In this document: positions 1 through 17,400 of the stretch, one piece after another
Numbering within the stretch: position 1 is the first letter of the stretch
How the letters are laid out: the number at the start of each line of letters is the position of its first letter
Origin: Hamiltosporidium tvaerminnensis FI-OER-3-3
Lineage: Eukaryota; Fungi; Microsporidia
Length of the DNA stretch: 64,000 nt
Assembly: GCA_022605425.2 (NCBI GenBank)
Contig: CM061249.1
Span: 930,001-994,000 of the forward strand
Direction: 5' to 3'
Notes under the pieces: generated by a model
Database searches by the model: none
What the model was told of the DNA's origin: nothing
The model's input: the letters and a program-made list of their open reading frames with translations, nothing else
Made by a program: the position numbers and the translations under genes

Positions 1-790
1 ATGAAGTGTTTGATGCTTACACCTACTTCTTCTAAATAGATATAAGTTTAAGTCTTCAAAACGAATAAAGAGCCACTCAGTTCAAGAAATTCTTGATAAA
101 GAATATGCAGAGATAAGAGTGGACACTAGAATAAAAACTGATGTTAAAATTGGGAATAACAGACCCGACATATTTATTTTAGATAAGAAGAAGAATAAAA
201 TAACACTCACTGAAGTAGGAATTACTTCCCAAGATTCACTTCAAATAGTTGAAACTGAAAAACTTAGAAAGTATGACCTGCTAGCCAATGAGTTGGGCCT
301 TATTTATAAGTGTAGTGTTGAGATAATCCCTTATGTTATGACCTGGGACGGTATTGTGACAAAATACCATAAATCTCATCTTAAAAGACTAGAAATACCC
401 ATGAATGTAGAGGCATACATTCAGTCTATATTATTTAAGAAGACAGTCAAAACAATTTCCTTTGATCGACGAAGAGAGCTTGAGTCAAGACTAAATGCCG
501 AAGAGAGCTGGGAGAGAGCGTCAGTGGATGTTATTATGAGAGCAGAGATGCATGAGGAACCAACACTTTTTTTAAAAGAAGAAAAGAGAGAGGAAGATGG
601 TGCAAAAAAATTTCTAAGCGAAAAATAAAGCACCCCTTATTTCACAAGAAGGAACCACTTTAGAGGAACCGACCAATCACATAAATGAAGAGTCGGATTT
701 GAAAGAAGCGACAGTGGTGGTAAAAGAGGTAGAAGAAAACATATAAAAATGTCAAAAATATTTTAACCCATAATTTTATTAAATAAAATA
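1..790 (+). mobile_element. 3' end of a degenerate RLE-type (R4/Dong-like) non-LTR retrotransposon; restriction-like endonuclease domain
   Basis: ORF 119..628 contains RPDIFILD...EVGI...EKLRKYDLLA (PD-(D/E)xK RLE core) and PYVMTWDG. There is an in-frame TGA at 11-13 and a frameshift after 628. An A-rich tail follows near 780-790. Confidence 0.85.
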
Positions 791-1700: not shown

Positions 1701-2085
1701 CTAGAGATATAGAAGAATAAAGATATAAGAGAATATAAGAATATTAAGAAGAATATAAGAATAATAATACTAGAGATATGGAAGAACAGAAATAGTAAAA
1801 TATTAGAATAAAGATATAAGAGAATATAAGAATATTAAGAAGAATATAAGAATAATAATACTAGAGATATGGAAGAACAGAAATAGTAAAATACTAGAAT
1901 AATGATATAAGAGGATATAAGAATATTAAGAAGAATATAAGAATAATAATACTTGAGATATGGAAGAACAGAAATAGTAAAATACTAGAATAATGATATA
2001 AGAGGATATAAGAATATTAAGAAGAATATAAGAATAATAATACTTGAGATATGGAAGAACAGAAATAGTAAAATACTAGAAGAAT
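1701..2085. repeat. 91-bp tandem repeat (about 3.5 units plus a shorter first unit)
   Basis: CT(A/T)GAGATATGGAAGAACAGAAATAGTAAAA recurs at 1770, 1861, 1952 and 2043, with a 69-bp variant at 1701. Confidence 0.9.
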
Positions 2086-2159: not shown

Positions 2160-2545
2160 TTAGTGTTAATTATAAGTATAATATACGAGGGTGTTAATAA
2201 CACTACACTTATAATATCCTTATAAATAACACCCTCTTATAATATCGTTATCATTAACACCCTCTTAATTACTACTACTATCATTAACACCTCCTTATAT
2301 TATTCTTATCATTAACACTACTCTTCTATTATCCTTATCATTAACACCCTATTATATTATCCTTATCATTAACACCCTCTTATATTATCCTTATAATTAA
2401 CACCCTTTTCTTCTATCCTATAATTAAAACCCTATTATATTATCCTTATAAATAACACCCTCTTATATCATCCTATAATTAACATCCTCTTAATTACTAG
2501 TACTATAATTAACACCACTCCATACCCTAACACCCTAATACCCCC
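2160..2545. repeat. ~30-bp minisatellite (ATTAACACCCTCTTATATTATCCTT-type), a short G-arm then a long C-arm
   Basis: GGGTGTTAAT near 2189 is followed by about ten TAACACC-type units. CCCTAA occurs near 2525-2540. Confidence 0.85.
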
Positions 2546-2656
2546 TTATGCAAATATAGGCATAAACCTGTTACCAAACATAACATACACACTAACACCC
2601 TAATACCCCCTTATGCAAATATAGGCATAAACCTGTTACCAAACATAACATACACA
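2527..2656. repeat. 65-bp direct tandem duplication including the helicase stop codon
   Basis: CTAACACCCTAATACCCCCTTATGCAAATATAGGCATAAACCTGTTACCAAACATAACATACACA occurs at 2527-2591 and 2592-2656. Confidence 0.95.
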
Positions 2657-5600
2657 TTATAAACCCTTTTTCTTACACTCTCACTAACACCATACACTTC
2701 CATAACCTTTAACAAAGAATCTAAAAAATTATAAAAAATATTTAAACTACAAAATAATTCTTTAACCTTAACACAATTAACACTCTCTAAGTCATTAATT
2801 CTTCCATGTAAAAAGAAATCTAAAATATAAGAATTCTTATAACTTTCTAAGTAATTAACATAGAAAAAAGAGGAATATTTCTTTAAGGATAGAGTTTTAG
2901 AATAATTGTTGTTAGTGTTAAGGTTGTTAGTATATGTAGTATAGTTGTTAGTATAGTTGTTAGTATAGTTGTTAGTATAGTTGTTAGTATAGTTGTTAGT
3001 ATAGTTGTTAGTATAGTTGTTGTTAGTATAAGTAGTATAAGTAGTATTAGTATTACTACTAGTATTACCTATATTACTAGTATTACTTATATTACTATCA
3101 CTACTACCACCCACATCACTATCACTCCCACTACCACCCACACCACTATCACTCCCACCACTATCACCCCCACACCCACTACCATGCCTCTCTAGAAATA
3201 ACACCTCTTTAGAATATAAAAATCTACTTTCTTTTAAATACTTCTTATTTATATTTTTACACATTTTAAATATTTTATTATTTAAGTTGGGAAGTGTAAA
3301 GGATGTTTTAAAAGGTAAAGGTTTTACTTGTATGAAATTACAAAGTAAGGAAATAAAGGGTATTGGTTCTAAGTCAATTAAAGGGTTAAATGCATTACTG
3401 TTAATTATATAAATAATAAGAAATATAGAAGTATCACAAGAGATATTAGAGATAACAAGGTCAGAGAGGGAAGTGAGGTATATATTGTTGTGGGTAGTAT
3501 TGTTAAGGGGGTGTTGTTTATTAGTAGTATTACTAAGAGGGTGTTGTTTAGAGGTATTACTAAGAGGGTGTTTATTAGAGGTAGTGTTAAGAGGGTGTTT
3601 ATTAGTAGTATTAGTACTTTTGTTAACACCTTGTTGTTCATAAGGTCTATTATTAACACCCTTATAATTACTACTACCCTTATTAACACCCTCTAAAATA
3701 CCCTTATCAATATCACCCTCTAAAATACCTTTATCTTTACTATTATCTAATACCCCTTTTATTACTTCATTTATCATATTATCTAACCCTTTACCTTCTA
3801 TAAACTTATACTTCAATAAATTATAATACATTCTCCTTATTAACACCTCTCTAACAGACATATTATTGTTATTATTAGTTATAGTGTTATTAGTGTTATC
3901 TAGTATATTCTTATTCTCTAACCCATTCTCTTTACCCCCTAACCCATTCTCTTTACCCTCTAACCCATTCTCTTTACCCTTATCCAATCCACTCTCCAAT
4001 CCACTCTCCAATCCACTCTCCAATCCACTCTCTAATAAATTACTATCACCCCCTACCACACCCACCATATCAAACAATGGATACTTAAATAGTGAAATAA
4101 GATACTCCTTATTAAAACATAATAAAGAACTATTAATAAAAGAATAAGACCCTTTAAGATCAGGTACCTTACTAACCATTAAATTTTGTATTTTTCTTTT
4201 ACTAACCCCTAAAAATATAACATGTCCCAACGTATCAAACCCTCTACGCCCTGCTCTTCCAGCCATTTGTCTATAATTTAAAGAATCTAAATATAAACTA
4301 TCACCAGCAAATATAACACTACGACATGGCATATTAATACCTAAAGATAAAGTATCAGTAGAAAATACAACATTTAAATGTTTAGTTCTAAAAAGTATTT
4401 CTACTAATTCTCTATACTTCTTATTCATACCATTATGATGTATACCTATACCTCTACTAAGTATTTCTAAATACGTTTTATCTATACTTTTACCTCTTAC
4501 TACTTCTTTTATCTGTTCTTCTAATTCATAATCACTTAATTTATTTATAGGATTTAAAAAACAATATTTTATATTTCTTTTTTCTTCTAATATTTCTATA
4601 TTCTCTTCTTCTTTTATACTTTCTTCTTTCCAATCTTCTTCTTTTTTCTTTTCATCTCTGTTTCTTTTCATTTCTTTTAATAATTTTTCTCTTTTTTTTA
4701 TTTCTATTTTATTTATATTTTCTGATAATTCCATTTTTTCTAAAGAATTTAAAACTTTTAAAGCTAATTTGTTACAAATAGATCTATCAGTGTTAAATAC
4801 AATACAAGGTAAAAGGTTTTGTTCTTTAAGAGTATTGAGTAAGGGGAGTATATTATCAAGGAGGTAGTCAGTAGTAAGGGTGGTGGTAGTGTGGGTGGTG
4901 GTAGTGTGGGTGGTGTGGGTGTTGTTGTGTGTGTTGTTAGTGTAGGTGTTGTTGTTATTAGTATTATTGTTAGTAGTACTGTTATTAGTATTGTTAGTAC
5001 TATCTTTATCCTTATTACTAATATCCTTATTACTATCATTACTTATATCCTCTTCCTTACTAATATCCTCTTCCTTACTTATACCCTCTTCCTTACTTAT
5101 ATCCTCTTCCTTACTTATATCCTCTTCCTTACTATTATCCCCATTACCACCATCCTCATTACCACCCTCATTACCACCCCCCTCCCCCTCACCCTCATTA
5201 CCACCACCACCAATACCAAATCCCCTTTCTATATCCCCTATGATATAAGAATACATTTCATTTACCTGTTGATATTCTAAAATATTATTTCGAATCCAAT
5301 AAAATATTTTTTCCAATAAAAAACTTTCAAATTCTTTAACATCTTTTTTACTTAAAATATTACTTTTAAAGAATTTAGAAGGTTTTAATTCTTTAATTAA
5401 ATATTTCTGTTCTTTTTTAAGAACAGCATATACAGAATAATAAATATTAAGTAAATCTTCTGGTAAAAAATTTAAATCTGTATTTATTTTACCATGTAAT
5501 TTTATATATGAAACTGAATATGCAAATAAAGGGTTTATAGGTATTAAAGAATTATTAAAAATGTACATTTTTAAATCACAATATCTTTCTTTATGAATTA

Positions 5601-7464
5601 CTAAATTACATTTTCTATTTTTTAAATTTTCTATATTTTTTATCCAATTATAAAAATTATTTAAATTACCTATTGTAGCACTTAAAACTAGAAGAGGACA
5701 TGGAGATAAATGTATTATTCTTTCTATGTGTATTCCCATTTCTTCTGAACTTATTTTATGTATTTCATCTATAATTATATATTTTAAATTTTTTATATAA
5801 TTTTGAGGTGGAGATTTTAATAGGGATTCTAACATAGAAGGTACTGTGATAAGTACTTGGCAATTGTAAGGGTCTATTTGGTAATCTTTCATAAGGATAC
5901 CTTGTAAAACCATATTTTTTTTTGAGTAAACTTTTGTAACGAATCTAGCGTATACGTCTGCAGCTACTTGGTTTACTAAGGCTTTAGTAGGAAGACAGAA
6001 TATTACAATTCCTTCGTCTGATTCTCTAAGTACTTTTTCTATAGCGTAAAAACATATAAATGTTTTTCCTGAAGAGGTAGGAGCAGATACTACAGCACTT
6101 CTGTTTTCATCTACTAGATTAAGAAGGTCTACTTGCCATTTGTCTGGTTCAAAAAGTACTCTTTTGTCTTTTACAGAATCTAAAGTTCTTTTGAGTTTGT
6201 CTCCTGCAAATTTTAATTGGAAATAAATATCTAAATCGTTGGGTTTTTTAGATATTTTTTGAGAAGTGAAGGTAAGATTAAGTGACAAATTATATTTATG
6301 AAGAAGTTCTATAGTTGAAGATTCAAATGAAGAATCTATTAAATTATATTTATGAAGAAGTTCTAAAGCAGTAGATTCAAATCCACAATCAATTAGTTTT
6401 TGAAATACGAATTCCATTTCTAAATTAGAAATATTTTTAAATTTTTCAGGATCAGAAATAAATCTGTCAATAAAATTTAAACAGTTTAAATAACAAGGAA
6501 TTAAAACCTTTTCGTTTATTTCTTCTTTTCTTTTTTCTAAAGACCAAAGATCAAAGTAAAATTCTATTTTAAGTAAAATTATTTTTTTTACTACTGAATC
6601 ACTAAAACCACCTTCCATAAAATTTTCTAAATAAATTTTTTTACTTTCAGTGTCTAAATTAAGGTATTTAGCATGGAAGGATTTTAAAAAAATTAATTCT
6701 TTTTTTCTTTTTTCTGTTTCTAATTTTTTTTCATTTTCTTTTATAAATTGAATTTGTTTTTTTGATTTTTTTTCTGGTTTTTCGTTTTGTTTTGAAAGTC
6801 TTTTTATGGGGTTATAAAGTAATTTACCACCGAAAAGAGACATGGCTGCTTTTTTTAAGTGTTGACTGTAATACTGAGTGTTTTTTCTTGGTCTGTCATC
6901 TCTTTTGGTTATTGAAAGTTCTAATGAGTTTTTTACAGAAGGAACAGCTGGTATAATCAGAGTATCAACATAGAGATCATCTATGGTATTAGTAGGGATG
7001 GTATTAGTAGTGTTAGTGTTAGTAGTGATAGTGTTAGTAGTAGTTTTAGTAGGGATGGTGTTAGTAGAAGTATTGTTAGTAGTAGTAGTGTTATTAGAAG
7101 TATAACCACCAGTATTACCAATGTTATAACCATCAATATAACCACCAATATAACCATCAGCATCAGTATTACCATCAGTGTTATTAAAACTTGTATAGCT
7201 CTTATTTATATTTTCTTTATCATACTCTTCTTCTGGAATAGAATCATTTACAAGTATTCTACCGTCAAATATAAAATCTTCTTTTTCTTTTATTTCTTTT
7301 CTAACTGCCATACAAAGACTTTCAGAAATTTGTTTTTGTGTGGATTTAAAATAAGAAAAATTACTAAGATTTTCTTCACAAATAAATTTAATTTTTTCTA
7401 AATTAAAATTTTTATTTTGTTTGAATATTTCCTCTTCAATTTCTAAAAAAGAAATTTTATTTTT
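2611..7464 (-). CDS. DDX60-like (Ski2-family) DExH-box RNA helicase, main part. The frame is open upstream of the annotated ATG (7311) to 7464.
   Basis: Motifs are FEPDKWQ, APTSSGKT (I), PTKALVNQ (Ia), DEIH (II), SAT (III), GIGIHHNGM, LSLGINMPCRSV (V) and QMAGRAGRRGFD (VI). These closely resemble the DDX60 subfamily. There are five long low-complexity inserts. Confidence 0.92.
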   Translation of the reverse strand, partial: KNKISFLEIEEEIFKQNKNFNLEKIKFICEENLSNFSYFKSTQKQISESLCMAVRKEIKEKEDFIFDGRILVNDSIPEEEYDKENINKSYTSFNNTDGNTDADGYIGGYIDGYNIGNTGGYTSNNTTTTNNTSTNTIPTKTTTNTITTNTNTTNTIPTNTIDDLYVDTLIIPAVPSVKNSLELSITKRDDRPRKNTQYYSQHLKKAAMSLFGGKLLYNPIKRLSKQNEKPEKKSKKQIQFIKENEKKLETEKRKKELIFLKSFHAKYLNLDTESKKIYLENFMEGGFSDSVVKKIILLKIEFYFDLWSLEKRKEEINEKVLIPCYLNCLNFIDRFISDPEKFKNISNLEMEFVFQKLIDCGFESTALELLHKYNLIDSSFESSTIELLHKYNLSLNLTFTSQKISKKPNDLDIYFQLKFAGDKLKRTLDSVKDKRVLFEPDKWQVDLLNLVDENRSAVVSAPTSSGKTFICFYAIEKVLRESDEGIVIFCLPTKALVNQVAADVYARFVTKVYSKKNMVLQGILMKDYQIDPYNCQVLITVPSMLESLLKSPPQNYIKNLKYIIIDEIHKISSEEMGIHIERIIHLSPCPLLVLSATIGNLNNFYNWIKNIENLKNRKCNLVIHKERYCDLKMYIFNNSLIPINPLFAYSVSYIKLHGKINTDLNFLPEDLLNIYYSVYAVLKKEQKYLIKELKPSKFFKSNILSKKDVKEFESFLLEKIFYWIRNNILEYQQVNEMYSYIIGDIERGFGIGGGGNEGEGEGGGNEGGNEDGGNGDNSKEEDISKEEDISKEEGISKEEDISKEEDISNDSNKDISNKDKDSTNNTNNSTTNNNTNNNNTYTNNTHNNTHTTHTTTTHTTTTLTTDYLLDNILPLLNTLKEQNLLPCIVFNTDRSICNKLALKVLNSLEKMELSENINKIEIKKREKLLKEMKRNRDEKKKEEDWKEESIKEEENIEILEEKRNIKYCFLNPINKLSDYELEEQIKEVVRGKSIDKTYLEILSRGIGIHHNGMNKKYRELVEILFRTKHLNVVFSTDTLSLGINMPCRSVIFAGDSLYLDSLNYRQMAGRAGRRGFDTLGHVIFLGVSKRKIQNLMVSKVPDLKGSYSFINSSLLCFNKEYLISLFKYPLFDMVGVVGGDSNLLESGLESGLESGLESGLDKGKENGLEGKENGLGGKENGLENKNILDNTNNTITNNNNNMSVREVLIRRMYYNLLKYKFIEGKGLDNMINEVIKGVLDNSKDKGILEGDIDKGILEGVNKGSSNYKGVNNRPYEQQGVNKSTNTTNKHPLNTTSNKHPLSNTSKQHPLSNTTNKQHPLNNTTHNNIYLTSLSDLVISNISCDTSIFLIIYIINSNAFNPLIDLEPIPFISLLCNFIQVKPLPFKTSFTLPNLNNKIFKMCKNINKKYLKESRFLYSKEVLFLERHGSGCGGDSGGSDSGVGGSGSDSDVGGSSDSNISNTSNIGNTSSNTNTTYTTYTNNNYTNNYTNNYTNNYTNNYTNNYTNNYTTYTNNLNTNNNYSKTLSLKKYSSFFYVNYLESYKNSYILDFFLHGRINDLESVNCVKVKELFCSLNIFYNFLDSLLKVMEVYGVSESVRKRVYNVYVMFGNRFMPIFA

Positions 7465-8015
7465 TTATTTTCTTTTTTAAAAAATTTTAAAATAAAATTT
7501 GTTTTAAACGGTCTGTAAACAAAAAGACTTACGGATGATACTTTAAATTCCATATTTATCATAAGACCTGTATATATATCAATATTAAGACAATGTTTAA
7601 GATAATTTAAAGAAGAAATGTCTGTGTCTGTTAGTGTTAAGGCTACTCTTTGTTCAGAAAGAAAATCTGTAAAATCTTTGAAAAATATTTCATGCATTTT
7701 TAGTTTTTTATTTTTTTTTATAATTTTTTTTGTAAATTCTTTTATGCATTCAATGTAAATATCTTCTGTTTCGTCTAAAAAGAAAATAACTGTAATGTCA
7801 GTAAAATTTGCTTGAAAAAGATTTTCAAATAAAATTTTTAAGGCGTGTTTGTATGTTAGAAGAGGAAGGTGGGTGTATGTAAGGGAGTATTGGTTTTTGA
7901 TGTGGTGTATAAGTGATTCACCTTTTATCAGTAGTGTTCCCATTCCTGGAAAGTGTGAACTGACTTCTGTAAACGTTGGAATATTTTTTTGGAAGAAATT
8001 ATTTTCATCTGTCAT
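7443..8015 (-). CDS. N-terminal portion of the same DDX60-like gene (frameshifted); likely start MTDENN at 8015
   Basis: LLIKGESLIHH...LFENLFQANFTDITVIFF resembles the DDX60 N-terminal 'LIDGDSLL...IVFF' region. It overlaps the main frame at 7443-7464, and one extra A in the A7 run (7460-7466) would fuse the two. CCC precedes the ATG at 8015. Confidence 0.75.
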   Translation of the reverse strand: MTDENNFFQKNIPTFTEVSSHFPGMGTLLIKGESLIHHIKNQYSLTYTHLPLLTYKHALKILFENLFQANFTDITVIFFLDETEDIYIECIKEFTKKIIKKNKKLKMHEIFFKDFTDFLSEQRVALTLTDTDISSLNYLKHCLNIDIYTGLMINMEFKVSSVSLFVYRPFKTNFILKFFKKENKKIKFLF

Positions 8016-8584
8016 TTTTATGGGTGAAAAATAGAAATTTTTATTCATTTTTTTGAAACAAAAATATTGAGATTTTTATTTTTAGGAAGGAAAAAAACTT
8101 AATTTTGAAAACGGATTTATTTTTAAAACAAATAAAAGGAAAATATTGAGATTTTTATTTTTAGGAAAACGGATGTAAAAAAATGATTGGAGACAAACAA
8201 ATACAAATAAAAGGAAAATATATATTTGAAGGAAAACGGATGTAAAAAATAATTTTTGAGAAGGAATTTATTGAAAATACAAAGGTTTTAAAGAAATTTA
8301 AAATCTACAAAATTTAAAATCTACAAAGATTTATAAAAATAATTAAAACTTTATTTCTTATTTATTTCATTGTATTATAAATTACTAAAAGATTCCTGGT
8401 TAAAGGTGCTTTCTTTATCTTTAAAAACATATCCTTCTCTTTCTCGGATTATTTGCTTTATTCAAGCTTATTTGCCGTTCTTCTGTTATGTTTACGCGTT
8501 ATAATATAAAAAGTAAAACATTTTTTTTATTTAATAGATAAAAGAATATAAAAGAAAATATGGTATTTTAAGTATTCTAGTGTA

Positions 8585-16709: not shown

Positions 16710-17400
16710 ACAGGGGCGGATAACCACATGAAAAAACCATCTGCTTGGTAATGAGTATAAGAATTTGGTGTGAAAAATCATTATTTGGATTTATGCTGAA
16801 AAAAACCATGCACCTTTTTTAGTTGTTGATAGGTGTTTGTATGAGGAGAGGAAGTCTAAGAAATGGAGAAACTTTTTCTACAAATTTATTTGTAGTTTTT
16901 TATGTAACTAGATAAGAGAAAGCGGCTGAACTTTTAGGCAATCGCCATGTAAAAGCATGAAACCCAAGCCTTAGCGTATTCGGGTTAGAAAACTTAGCGC
17001 CTGGGTGATATAAAAATAAACACATTTAAAGCCGGGAAAGCTAAGTAGCATGTTATAGCTGTAAGGCATGGCATTGCATTTTCTAGATGCATTCTATATA
17101 AGTCGCCGTGATATATTATAGCTGAAAGTTTATAAGGTTCGGAAATTGTGAGTATGTGGAAATGCTGCATAGTCTTGGTGTGTCTAGGGTGGGTTTTGAC
17201 CTACAATCACACTCCTTTCAACTGGCATTCACAAACTTCAGGGATCTGCCTCGCCTATTAATTGAGTTGTACACACTTATTAGATTAAAGGGTTTGAGAT
17301 GTAGGCATCGTAGGGGTACCGATAGAGTTTTAGCGTAACAGTTATTTATTCTAAACCTAGAACTGCCTTAATGTCATAGAAACAATATAAGACTTGCCAA
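16710..17400 (+). repeat. Dispersed ~690-bp non-coding element, copy 2
   Basis: Colinear with the reverse complement of 834..1530. It begins CAGGGGCGGATAACC directly at the duplication breakpoint. Confidence 0.75.

What the first reader, a model, noticed from the sequence alone, without database searches (positions are those of the whole stretch)
2160..7190. Polarised head-to-head G-arm/C-arm insertions, five in frame in the helicase: possible footprint of a telomerase-like end-extension-and-fusion process
Seen in the sequence: six low-complexity tracts (2160-2545 intergenic; 2885-3190, 3460-3800, 3860-4070, 4860-5220 and 6980-7190 in the helicase) all begin with a G-rich, nearly C-free arm and switch to a C-rich, nearly G-free arm. 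Two of the switches fall at AGTACT (3613-3618 and 4996-5001). The order is the same on either strand and is never reversed. The repeat words differ between tracts (GGGTGTTA, TAGTTGTTAG, GTGGGTGGT, GAGTGGATTG), so these are not copies of one element. Established: (TTAGGG)n(CCCTAA)n is the signature of two G-rich-extended 3' ends fused together. Inference: both ends of a break are extended with G-rich sequence, or expanded by strand-biased slippage, and then joined. In-frame products survive as Gly/Glu/Asp-rich to Thr/Asn/His-rich protein loops. Ordinary slippage alone does not predict a fixed polarity.
Basis: partly seen in the sequence, partly recalled or inferred. Interest (0 to 1): 0.85.

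Follow-up and report, generated by a model that had tools for sequence, protein, structure and literature searches.

The report
Polarised in-frame repeat modules, microsporidian genes
A microsporidian helicase gene is swollen by five translated low-complexity inserts that each run from G-rich to C-rich DNA. They belong to a genome-wide family of related repeat modules that share this order, and they are not made of telomere repeats.

Summary
The window matches the Hamiltosporidium tvaerminnensis assembly. Its DDX60/Ski2-like helicase (2611-7311, minus strand) carries five lineage-specific, in-frame, stop-free inserts, each a G-rich arm followed by a C-rich arm. The polarity reaches beyond the window. 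In 264 kb sampled, abutting arms run G->C 12 times and C->G 0 times. Genome-wide, the core word GGGTGTTA followed within 30 nt by its reverse complement occurs at 51 sites, against 11 in the reverse order.

The tracts are related copies: junction-spanning homology links tracts on different chromosomes, far above shuffled controls, and a 61-aa composite module matches at least 135 open-frame sites. The order is also sometimes reversed elsewhere in the genome.

The telomerase reading is not supported. Telomeres are clean (TTAGGG)n. No head-to-head telomere repeats were found. The arms are codon-phased 9-30 nt units. AT skew does not mirror between arms, and only one tract folds as a hairpin.

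Best reading (about 0.5): a dispersed family of translated coding-minisatellite modules, a G-core block followed by a C-core block. The polarity is inherited from a founder, the modules are copied between loci, and the blocks are resized by slippage. An active polar repair or template-switch process is not excluded.

The parts
2611..7311 (-). Main ORF (1566 aa) of a DDX60/Ski2-like DEAD-box helicase that carries the five inserts
   Evidence: ORF. Pfam DEAD, ResIII and Helicase_C. Microsporidian orthologs at about 60% identity. Alignment A1.
7443..8048 (-). Separate upstream ORF that encodes the helicase N-terminus; the frame is broken from the main ORF
   Evidence: Aligns to residues 10-164 of the V. 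ceranae ortholog, E 1e-23. The two frames overlap in an A/T homopolymer stretch.
6970..7190 (-). Tract T1: G arm 6970-7108 (15/30/57-nt units), then a weaker C arm 7099-7160 (12-nt unit)
   Evidence: Zero stops in the coding frame. Absent from orthologs.
4806..5267 (-). Tract T2: G arm 4806-4999, AGTACT at 4975-4980 and 4996-5001, C arm 4994-5267 with an 18-nt x 5.3 array
   Evidence: A shorter in-frame form appears in a contig of run X17. No significant hairpin, z -1.14.
3860..4091 (-). Tract T3: weak G arm, then a strong C arm (21-nt x 3 and 24-nt x 2 units)
   Evidence: About 21 nt less in a contig of run X18.
3438..3800 (-). Tract T4: G arm 3438-3626 (27-nt units with the GGGTGTT core), hinge AGTACT 3613-3618, C arm from 3644 (AACACCC core). 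This is the only tract that is a true quasi-palindrome.
   Evidence: DNA fold z -2.85, 0 of 100 shuffles fold as well. About tenfold read depth shows it is multi-copy. Homologous to junctions in L023 and L035.
2860..3213 (-). Tract T5: G arm 2860-3058 (12-nt x 8.5), C arm 3063-3213 (27-nt x 2)
   Evidence: Folds worse than shuffles, z +2.04.
2163..2496 (.). Non-coding relative downstream of the helicase stop: one inverted 36-nt unit (2163-2198), then a 28-nt x 10.3 array (2208-2496) with the same core
   Evidence: 94% complementary over 36 nt. Period 28. Stops in all six frames.
2527..2656 (.). 65-nt x 2 perfect tandem repeat that overlaps the helicase 3' end
   Evidence: One copy in the contig of run X17.

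Best explanation
The tracts are members of a genome-wide family of translated, codon-phased minisatellite modules. The family appears specific to this lineage in the small sample compared.

Each module is a block of units whose short core reads G-rich on the coding strand (GAGGGTG/GGTGTT, peptides such as EGVN or KGVN). It is followed by a block whose core is the reverse complement (CACCCTC/AACACC, peptides such as QHPLN or TNT). The A-rich backbone between cores keeps the coding orientation. The hinge often falls at Ser-Thr, AGT|ACT.

Shown: the modules are homologous across genes and chromosomes, they sit in variable loops of conserved proteins, they are kept open by selection, and block lengths differ between isolates.

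Inferred: the G-then-C order is inherited from a founder two-block module. A core flipped between short inverted repeats reads the same on either strand, so the order is independent of gene orientation. Modules spread by inter-locus copying (ectopic conversion or templated repair). Blocks then expand and contract by slippage or unequal exchange.
For: In-frame, lineage-specific inserts. Zero stops in frame against many out of frame. Unit periods are multiples of 3 in coding tracts, against 28, 65 and 91 nt in non-coding DNA.

Core 16-mer: 329 copies against 2 in the control. Unit 20-mers with the same backbone: the C-core form has 207 copies and the G-core form 285, controls 0. G-core units lie 5' of C-core units in about 11 of 12 co-located pairs read from those lists.

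The C-type core is the reverse complement of the G-type core with shared flanks. Hinge-spanning cross-locus homology: 66 hits against 0-2 in shuffles, including a 46-nt 100% match between contigs C1 and C2. The 61-aa composite module matches at least 135 sites, 134 of them without stops, mostly over its full length.

Polarity: 12:0, 51:11 and 71:25. Genes on both strands carry modules. Length variants appear in other runs. Orthologous helicase loci of three other microsporidia have no abutting arms and no core enrichment.
Against: No copying event, donor or target-site signature was seen, and the outer ends of modules are not defined.

Tracts T1, T2, T3 and T5 share only degenerate words with the core family, so common descent for them rests on 68-72% alignments of biased sequence.

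G and C arms of one locus are no closer to each other, and no further apart, than arms of different loci. That comparison therefore does not discriminate between readings.

Descent does not explain why the reversed order has not accumulated through inversions. Only 264 kb of 21.6 Mb could be scanned for arms. All 11 strong junctions lie in ORFs, so a protein-level cause is not excluded.
Confidence: 0.5

Rival explanations
1. An active, intrinsically polar DNA-level process builds each module in place. One version: the polymerase stalls on the G-rich template just after making an equivalent G-rich arm, and an intrastrand template switch follows. Another version: a two-ended break is repaired by extending both 3' ends on dispersed repeat donors, and the ends anneal at a palindromic microhomology such as AGTACT.
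For: The strong polarity is independent of gene strand. Hinges often lie at the palindrome AGTACT. A true inverted unit occurs in non-coding DNA. T4 is hairpin-capable. Simple inversions would give both orders equally.
Against: AT skew does not flip between arms. T2 and T5 do not fold better than shuffles. Short generic inverted repeats are only weakly polar, 54:40. Hinge-spanning homology between loci is explained more simply by copying. No event was observed.
Confidence: 0.22
2. Protein-level selection fixes the order. Loops need a Gly/Glu/Asp/Ser-rich segment before a Thr/Asn/His/Pro-rich segment, and the DNA skew is a by-product of codon choice.
For: All 11 strong abutting junctions in the sample lie inside long ORFs. 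Both arms are A-rich on the coding strand, which shows a strong coding filter. G-type cores sit in one reading frame in 75 of 91 cases.
Against: No functional reason for the order is known. C-type cores occur in all three frames, 26/20/14, which points to a DNA-level origin. The same core and an inverted unit occur in a non-coding array. The same modules sit in unrelated proteins. Orthologous helicases of other microsporidia have inserts without this order.
Confidence: 0.1
3. Telomerase-like extension of both ends of a break, followed by fusion.
For: The polarity is that of head-to-head telomere fusions. GGGTTA is the second most common arrangement of its letters in the arms, and two CCCTAA dimers lie in C arms of L023.
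Against: Telomeres are clean (TTAGGG)n with unrelated subtelomeres. The two dimers are single-base variants inside (ACTAAC)n Thr-Asn repeats. No head-to-head telomere dimers were found genome-wide. Units are 9-30 nt and codon-phased. AT skew is not mirrored.
Confidence: 0.02

Closest known systems
Rickettsia palindromic elements (RPEs): selfish palindromic repeats inserted in frame in protein genes (own knowledge; reviewed in PMC10969869, listed)
   Same: A dispersed multi-copy family inserted in frame into unrelated conserved genes and translated as extra loops. A quasi-palindromic core makes orientation irrelevant.
   Different: RPEs are bacterial and of defined length (about 100-150 bp), with a stable hairpin. 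Here the modules are variable tandem arrays without defined ends, in a eukaryote, and most do not fold as hairpins.
Low-complexity in-frame expansions of AT-rich parasites: Plasmodium LCRs (own knowledge) and the Asn-rich MCM expansions noted in Hamiltosporidium (PMC6944219)
   Same: In-frame, hydrophilic, slippage-prone inserts that split conserved domains at variable loops and differ in length between isolates.
   Different: Those are described as independent homopolymer-like expansions. Here the inserts share homologous units and hinges across at least 135 sites and have a fixed two-block polarity.
Head-to-head interstitial telomeric repeats from telomere fusion
   Same: G-rich then C-rich order on both strands.
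   Different: The arms are not the telomere repeat, no such dimers were found, and AT skew is not mirrored.
Small hairpin-loop inversions flanked by short inverted repeats, as in chloroplast non-coding DNA (own knowledge)
   Same: The G-core and C-core units differ by a flip of a 3-7 nt core between short inverted repeats (TTAA, or AACA...TGTT), while the backbone stays in place.
   Different: Here the two isomers are each amplified into blocks in a constant order inside coding sequence.
Foldback (FB) transposons and MITEs
   Same: Inverted arms made of tandem subrepeats. A family keeps one polarity whatever the insertion orientation.
   Different: No terminal inverted repeats with defined ends and no target-site duplications were seen. 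The arms are not true inverted copies in most tracts.

Membership tests
Telomere-fusion / telomerase-healed interstitial telomeric repeat | Arms composed of the organism's telomere repeat | tested here: not met
   The telomere is (TTAGGG)n. The arms are 9-30 nt units with a GGGTGTT/AACACCC core. No head-to-head telomere dimers were found.
Telomere-fusion / telomerase-healed interstitial telomeric repeat | Mirror symmetry of the two arms, with both GC and AT skew inverted | tested here: not met
   GC skew flips, but AT skew keeps its sign in both arms in most junctions.
Coding minisatellite / low-complexity expansion | Tandem units in multiples of 3 nt, open in the gene's frame | tested here: met
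   Periods 6-57 nt. All are multiples of 3 except one weak row. Zero in-frame stops.
Coding minisatellite / low-complexity expansion | Unit-number variation between isolates | tested here: inconclusive
   Short-read contigs show in-frame shorter forms of T2 and T3. Repeat collapse during contig assembly cannot be excluded.
Coding minisatellite / low-complexity expansion | Located at variable loops, absent from orthologs | tested here: met
   Alignment A1 with nine orthologs.
RPE-like selfish in-frame palindromic element | Dispersed homologous copies in unrelated genes, in frame | tested here: met
RPE-like selfish in-frame palindromic element | Stable hairpin and defined element length | tested here: not met
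   Only T4 folds better than shuffles. Arm lengths range from 60 to more than 600 nt.
Foldback/MITE transposon | Defined terminal inverted repeats and target-site duplications | tested here: inconclusive
   Reading the outer boundaries of T1, T2, T4 and T5 shows no shared termini or duplications. The boundaries themselves cannot be fixed from protein alignment.
Intein or spliceosomal intron | Hint/intein domain, or splice signals with no need for an open frame | tested here: not met
   Pfam finds only helicase domains. The tracts are open and codon-phased. Introns annotated in this species average 28 bp. RNA was not tested directly: run X24 had no reads.

The most novel reading that the evidence does not exclude
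A self-propagating repair scar. Breaks in genes of this microsporidian are patched by extending both 3' ends on dispersed repeat donors and joining them at a palindromic microhomology. Each patch would create a new in-frame G->C module that can serve as a donor in turn. This would be a eukaryotic counterpart of Rickettsia's in-frame selfish palindromes, with a built-in polarity.
Probability: 0.15. Interest if true: 0.85.

Novelty: new variant of a known kind. Interest (0 to 1): 0.6.

Why it matters
In-frame low-complexity expansions are usually treated as independent slippage products. Here, at least 135 sites across conserved genes share homologous two-block modules with a constant G-then-C order. 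That implies either copying of coding repeats between genes or a polar repair process.

Either way, it would help explain how a large-genome microsporidian inflates essential proteins. Helicases are shown here. Polymerases, Argonaute and cullin are suggested only by other unchecked notes of this scan.

It also gives a tractable system, because many Hamiltosporidium isolates are already sequenced, for watching coding repeats spread. And it warns annotators that these inserts are neither introns nor inteins on the evidence here.

Tried and rejected

2. RNA evidence: the only RNA run (X24) laid no reads, so there was no test.

3. Strict hexamer-dimer patterns (GTTAGT x2 with ACTAAC x2) gave 0:0 and are uninformative.

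4. Generic 8-mer inverted repeats are only weakly polar, 54:40, so the polarity is not a general hairpin property.

5. P0060 was tried as a close relative but is a distant ortholog, 39-46% identity.

6. The S-masked comparison of own arms against foreign arms did not discriminate local from shared origin. Direct against reverse-complement relatedness of the arms was mixed.

7. A strand-coordinated deamination model at resected breaks was rejected, because it predicts mirrored AT skew.

8. Simple inversion within an array was rejected as sufficient, because it predicts both orders equally.

9. Literature: three Hamiltosporidium genome papers mention only Asn-rich MCM expansions.

Full report
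**Organism and gene.** The window is G000:C4:930001-994000 of a 21,638,905-base, 17-contig assembly. It has 27% GC and (CCCTAA)n at 13 of 17 contig starts. These figures match the published Hamiltosporidium tvaerminnensis assembly: 21.64 Mb, 17 contigs, N50 1.44 Mb, 26.6% GC, TTAGGG telomeres (PMC10542269). The identification is inferred from these statistics.

The 'helicase' is a 1566-aa ORF on the minus strand, 2611-7311. It has DEAD, ResIII and Helicase_C domains. Its best relatives are microsporidian DDX60/Ski2-like helicases of about 1300 aa at roughly 60% identity over the ATPase region.

**Checking the observation.** Sliding skew and an explicit arm caller (60-nt windows, at least 12 G+C, |skew| >= 0.8) give strong G arms that directly abut strong C arms:
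- 2860-3058 | 3063-3213
- 3438-3626 | 3644-4091
- 4806-4999 | 4994-5267

The versions at 3860-4070 and 6970-7190 are weaker. In the intergenic tract the 'G arm' is one 36-nt unit (2163-2198). It is 94% complementary to the following 28-nt x 10.3 array.

Alignment with nine orthologs shows all five coding tracts as lineage-specific insertions at variable loops. Each has zero stops in the helicase frame and up to 36 in other frames. The intergenic tract has stops in all six frames. Tandem periods in the coding tracts are multiples of three, with one weak exception. The non-coding repeats have periods of 28, 65, 72 and 91 nt. The tracts are therefore under selection to stay translatable.

**Is the polarity real beyond this gene?** I drew twenty 10-kb stretches at even spacing along the first 1.97 contigs. 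In these stretches plus the window (264 kb):

| Maximum gap between arms | G->C | C->G |
|---|---|---|
| 30 nt | 12 | 0 |
| 60 nt | 13 | 2 |
| 100 nt | 15 | 6 |

C->G transitions have spacers of at least 47 nt (Mann-Whitney p = 0.0015). Eleven of the twelve abutting pairs are low-complexity tracts inside long ORFs, on the plus strand in L023 and on the minus strand in L035 and the window.

Genome-wide pattern counts give the same direction:

| Spacing between GGGTGTTA and TAACACCC | G->C order | C->G order |
|---|---|---|
| 0-30 nt | 51 sites | 11 sites |
| 31-60 nt | 71 sites | 25 sites |

Several reversed sites lie in alternating arrays. So the polarity is real and genome-wide, but it is a bias of about 3-5:1 at motif level, not an absolute rule. 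Generic short inverted repeats are only weakly polar, 54:40.

**The tracts are related, not independent.**
- The core 16-mer of the intergenic array has 329 copies at up to one mismatch, against 2 for the control.
- The 20-mer AGTACTAATAAACAACACCC (peptide STNKQHP) has 207 copies. Its isomer ending in GGG (STNKQQG) has 285. Controls are 0.
- Both isomers share the same 17-nt backbone on the same strand. Reading the co-located places in those two lists, G-core units lie 5' of C-core units in about 11 of 12 cases.
- Consensus flanks show that the C-type core is the reverse complement of the G-type core over about 18 nt.
- The heptamer GAGGGTG sits between TTAA-like self-complementary flanks. Flipping it gives CACCCTC and leaves the backbone in place.
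- Junction regions (plus or minus 150 nt) from the helicase, L023 (contig C1) and L035 (contig C2) give 435 pairwise BLAST hits, 66 of them spanning the hinge. Mono-shuffled arms give 0 hits. Triplet-shuffled arms give 20-42 hits, of which 0-2 span the hinge. One 46-nt stretch is identical between C1 and C2.
- A 61-aa composite module from L035 matches at least 135 places on all contigs. Most matches cover its full length, and 134 have no stop.
- Read depth over T4 is about tenfold the single-copy level in three independent runs.

**Why the telomerase reading fails.** Telomeres are clean (TTAGGG)n, with unrelated subtelomeres that lack the core. No head-to-head telomere dimers within 30 nt were found in the genome. 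The tool warns that it skips simple repeats.

Telomere-like words are somewhat enriched in the arms, and two CCCTAA dimers lie in C arms of L023. These are single-base variants inside (ACTAAC)n Thr-Asn repeats.

AT skew keeps the same sign in both arms: the coding strand is A-rich throughout. Mirrored end extension or inverted duplication would flip it. Only T4 folds better than shuffles (z -2.85). T2 does not (z -1.14), and T5 folds worse (z +2.04).

**Dynamics and distribution.** Short-read contigs of three other runs break inside the tracts but reach into the arms, so the tracts exist at the same positions in those samples. One contig (run X17) lacks 102 nt of the T2 G arm and a net 108 nt of its C arm, both in frame. 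Another run has about 21 nt less in T3. The 65-nt repeat is single-copy in X17. Contig collapse cannot be excluded.

The orthologous helicase loci of three other microsporidia (75 kb in all) have inserts, but no abutting arms and no core enrichment. Haag et al. noted Asn-rich in-frame expansions in Hamiltosporidium MCM and could not say what they were (PMC6944219). I found no description of the family or of its polarity.

**Interpretation.** The best-supported reading is a family of translated coding-minisatellite modules that appears specific to this lineage. Each module is a G-core block followed by a C-core block.
- Shown: the modules are homologous across loci, kept open by selection, and variable in length.
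- Inferred: the order is inherited from a founder module, modules are copied between genes, and blocks are resized by slippage.

An intrinsically polar process remains possible, for example a template switch at a G-rich template, or two-ended templated repair joined at AGTACT. It would better explain why reversed modules are rare. Protein-level selection for the order cannot be excluded, because every strong junction in my sample is coding. However, C-type cores occur in all three frames, and a non-coding relative with a true inverted unit exists.

Other first-stage notes on this genome report the same polarity in Argonaute, RPC1, POL3 and UFD2, and the same isomer idea. These are unchecked leads, not evidence.

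**Limits.** Only 264 kb were scanned for arms. Sites within one gene are not independent. No RNA test was possible. No copying event was observed.

Noticed in passing
window 7311-7470 (minus strand): The helicase gene is split into two ORFs whose open frames overlap by about 20 nt in an A/T homopolymer stretch. The upstream ORF (7443-8048) carries the orthologs' N-terminus. This could be a frameshift, a tiny intron or a homopolymer assembly error.
   Followed up: partly
window 119-628 (+), about 900-1100 and 17198-17276; L021, L028, L031, L033: A retroelement-like ORF fragment and a dispersed, non-low-complexity repeat that has its own C->G and G->C skew switches. It is unrelated to the tract family but inflates loose skew-switch counts (27:18 at a loose threshold).
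   Followed up: partly
window 1714-2081: A 91-nt x 4 purine-rich tandem repeat (98% identical copies) lies just upstream of the C-rich intergenic array, so the intergenic region also runs G-rich to C-rich on a larger scale.
   Followed up: no
G000 contigs C2:1.468-1.482 Mb, C12:0.236-0.257 and 2.460-2.472 Mb, C15:0.648-0.655 Mb: Matches to the 61-aa module cluster in a few regions with giant open frames (up to 5245 aa). These look like genes built largely of such modules.
   Followed up: no
window 4870-4971 and 5071-5185: In a contig of run X17 both arms of tract T2 are shorter by similar in-frame amounts (102 and 108 nt). This is either a symmetric change around the hinge or repeat collapse in the short-read contig.
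   Followed up: no
L023 3774 and 6365: Two exact CCCTAA dimers lie inside C arms. They arise as single-base variants of (ACTAAC)n Thr-Asn repeats, which are 5/6 identical to the telomere unit.
   Followed up: yes
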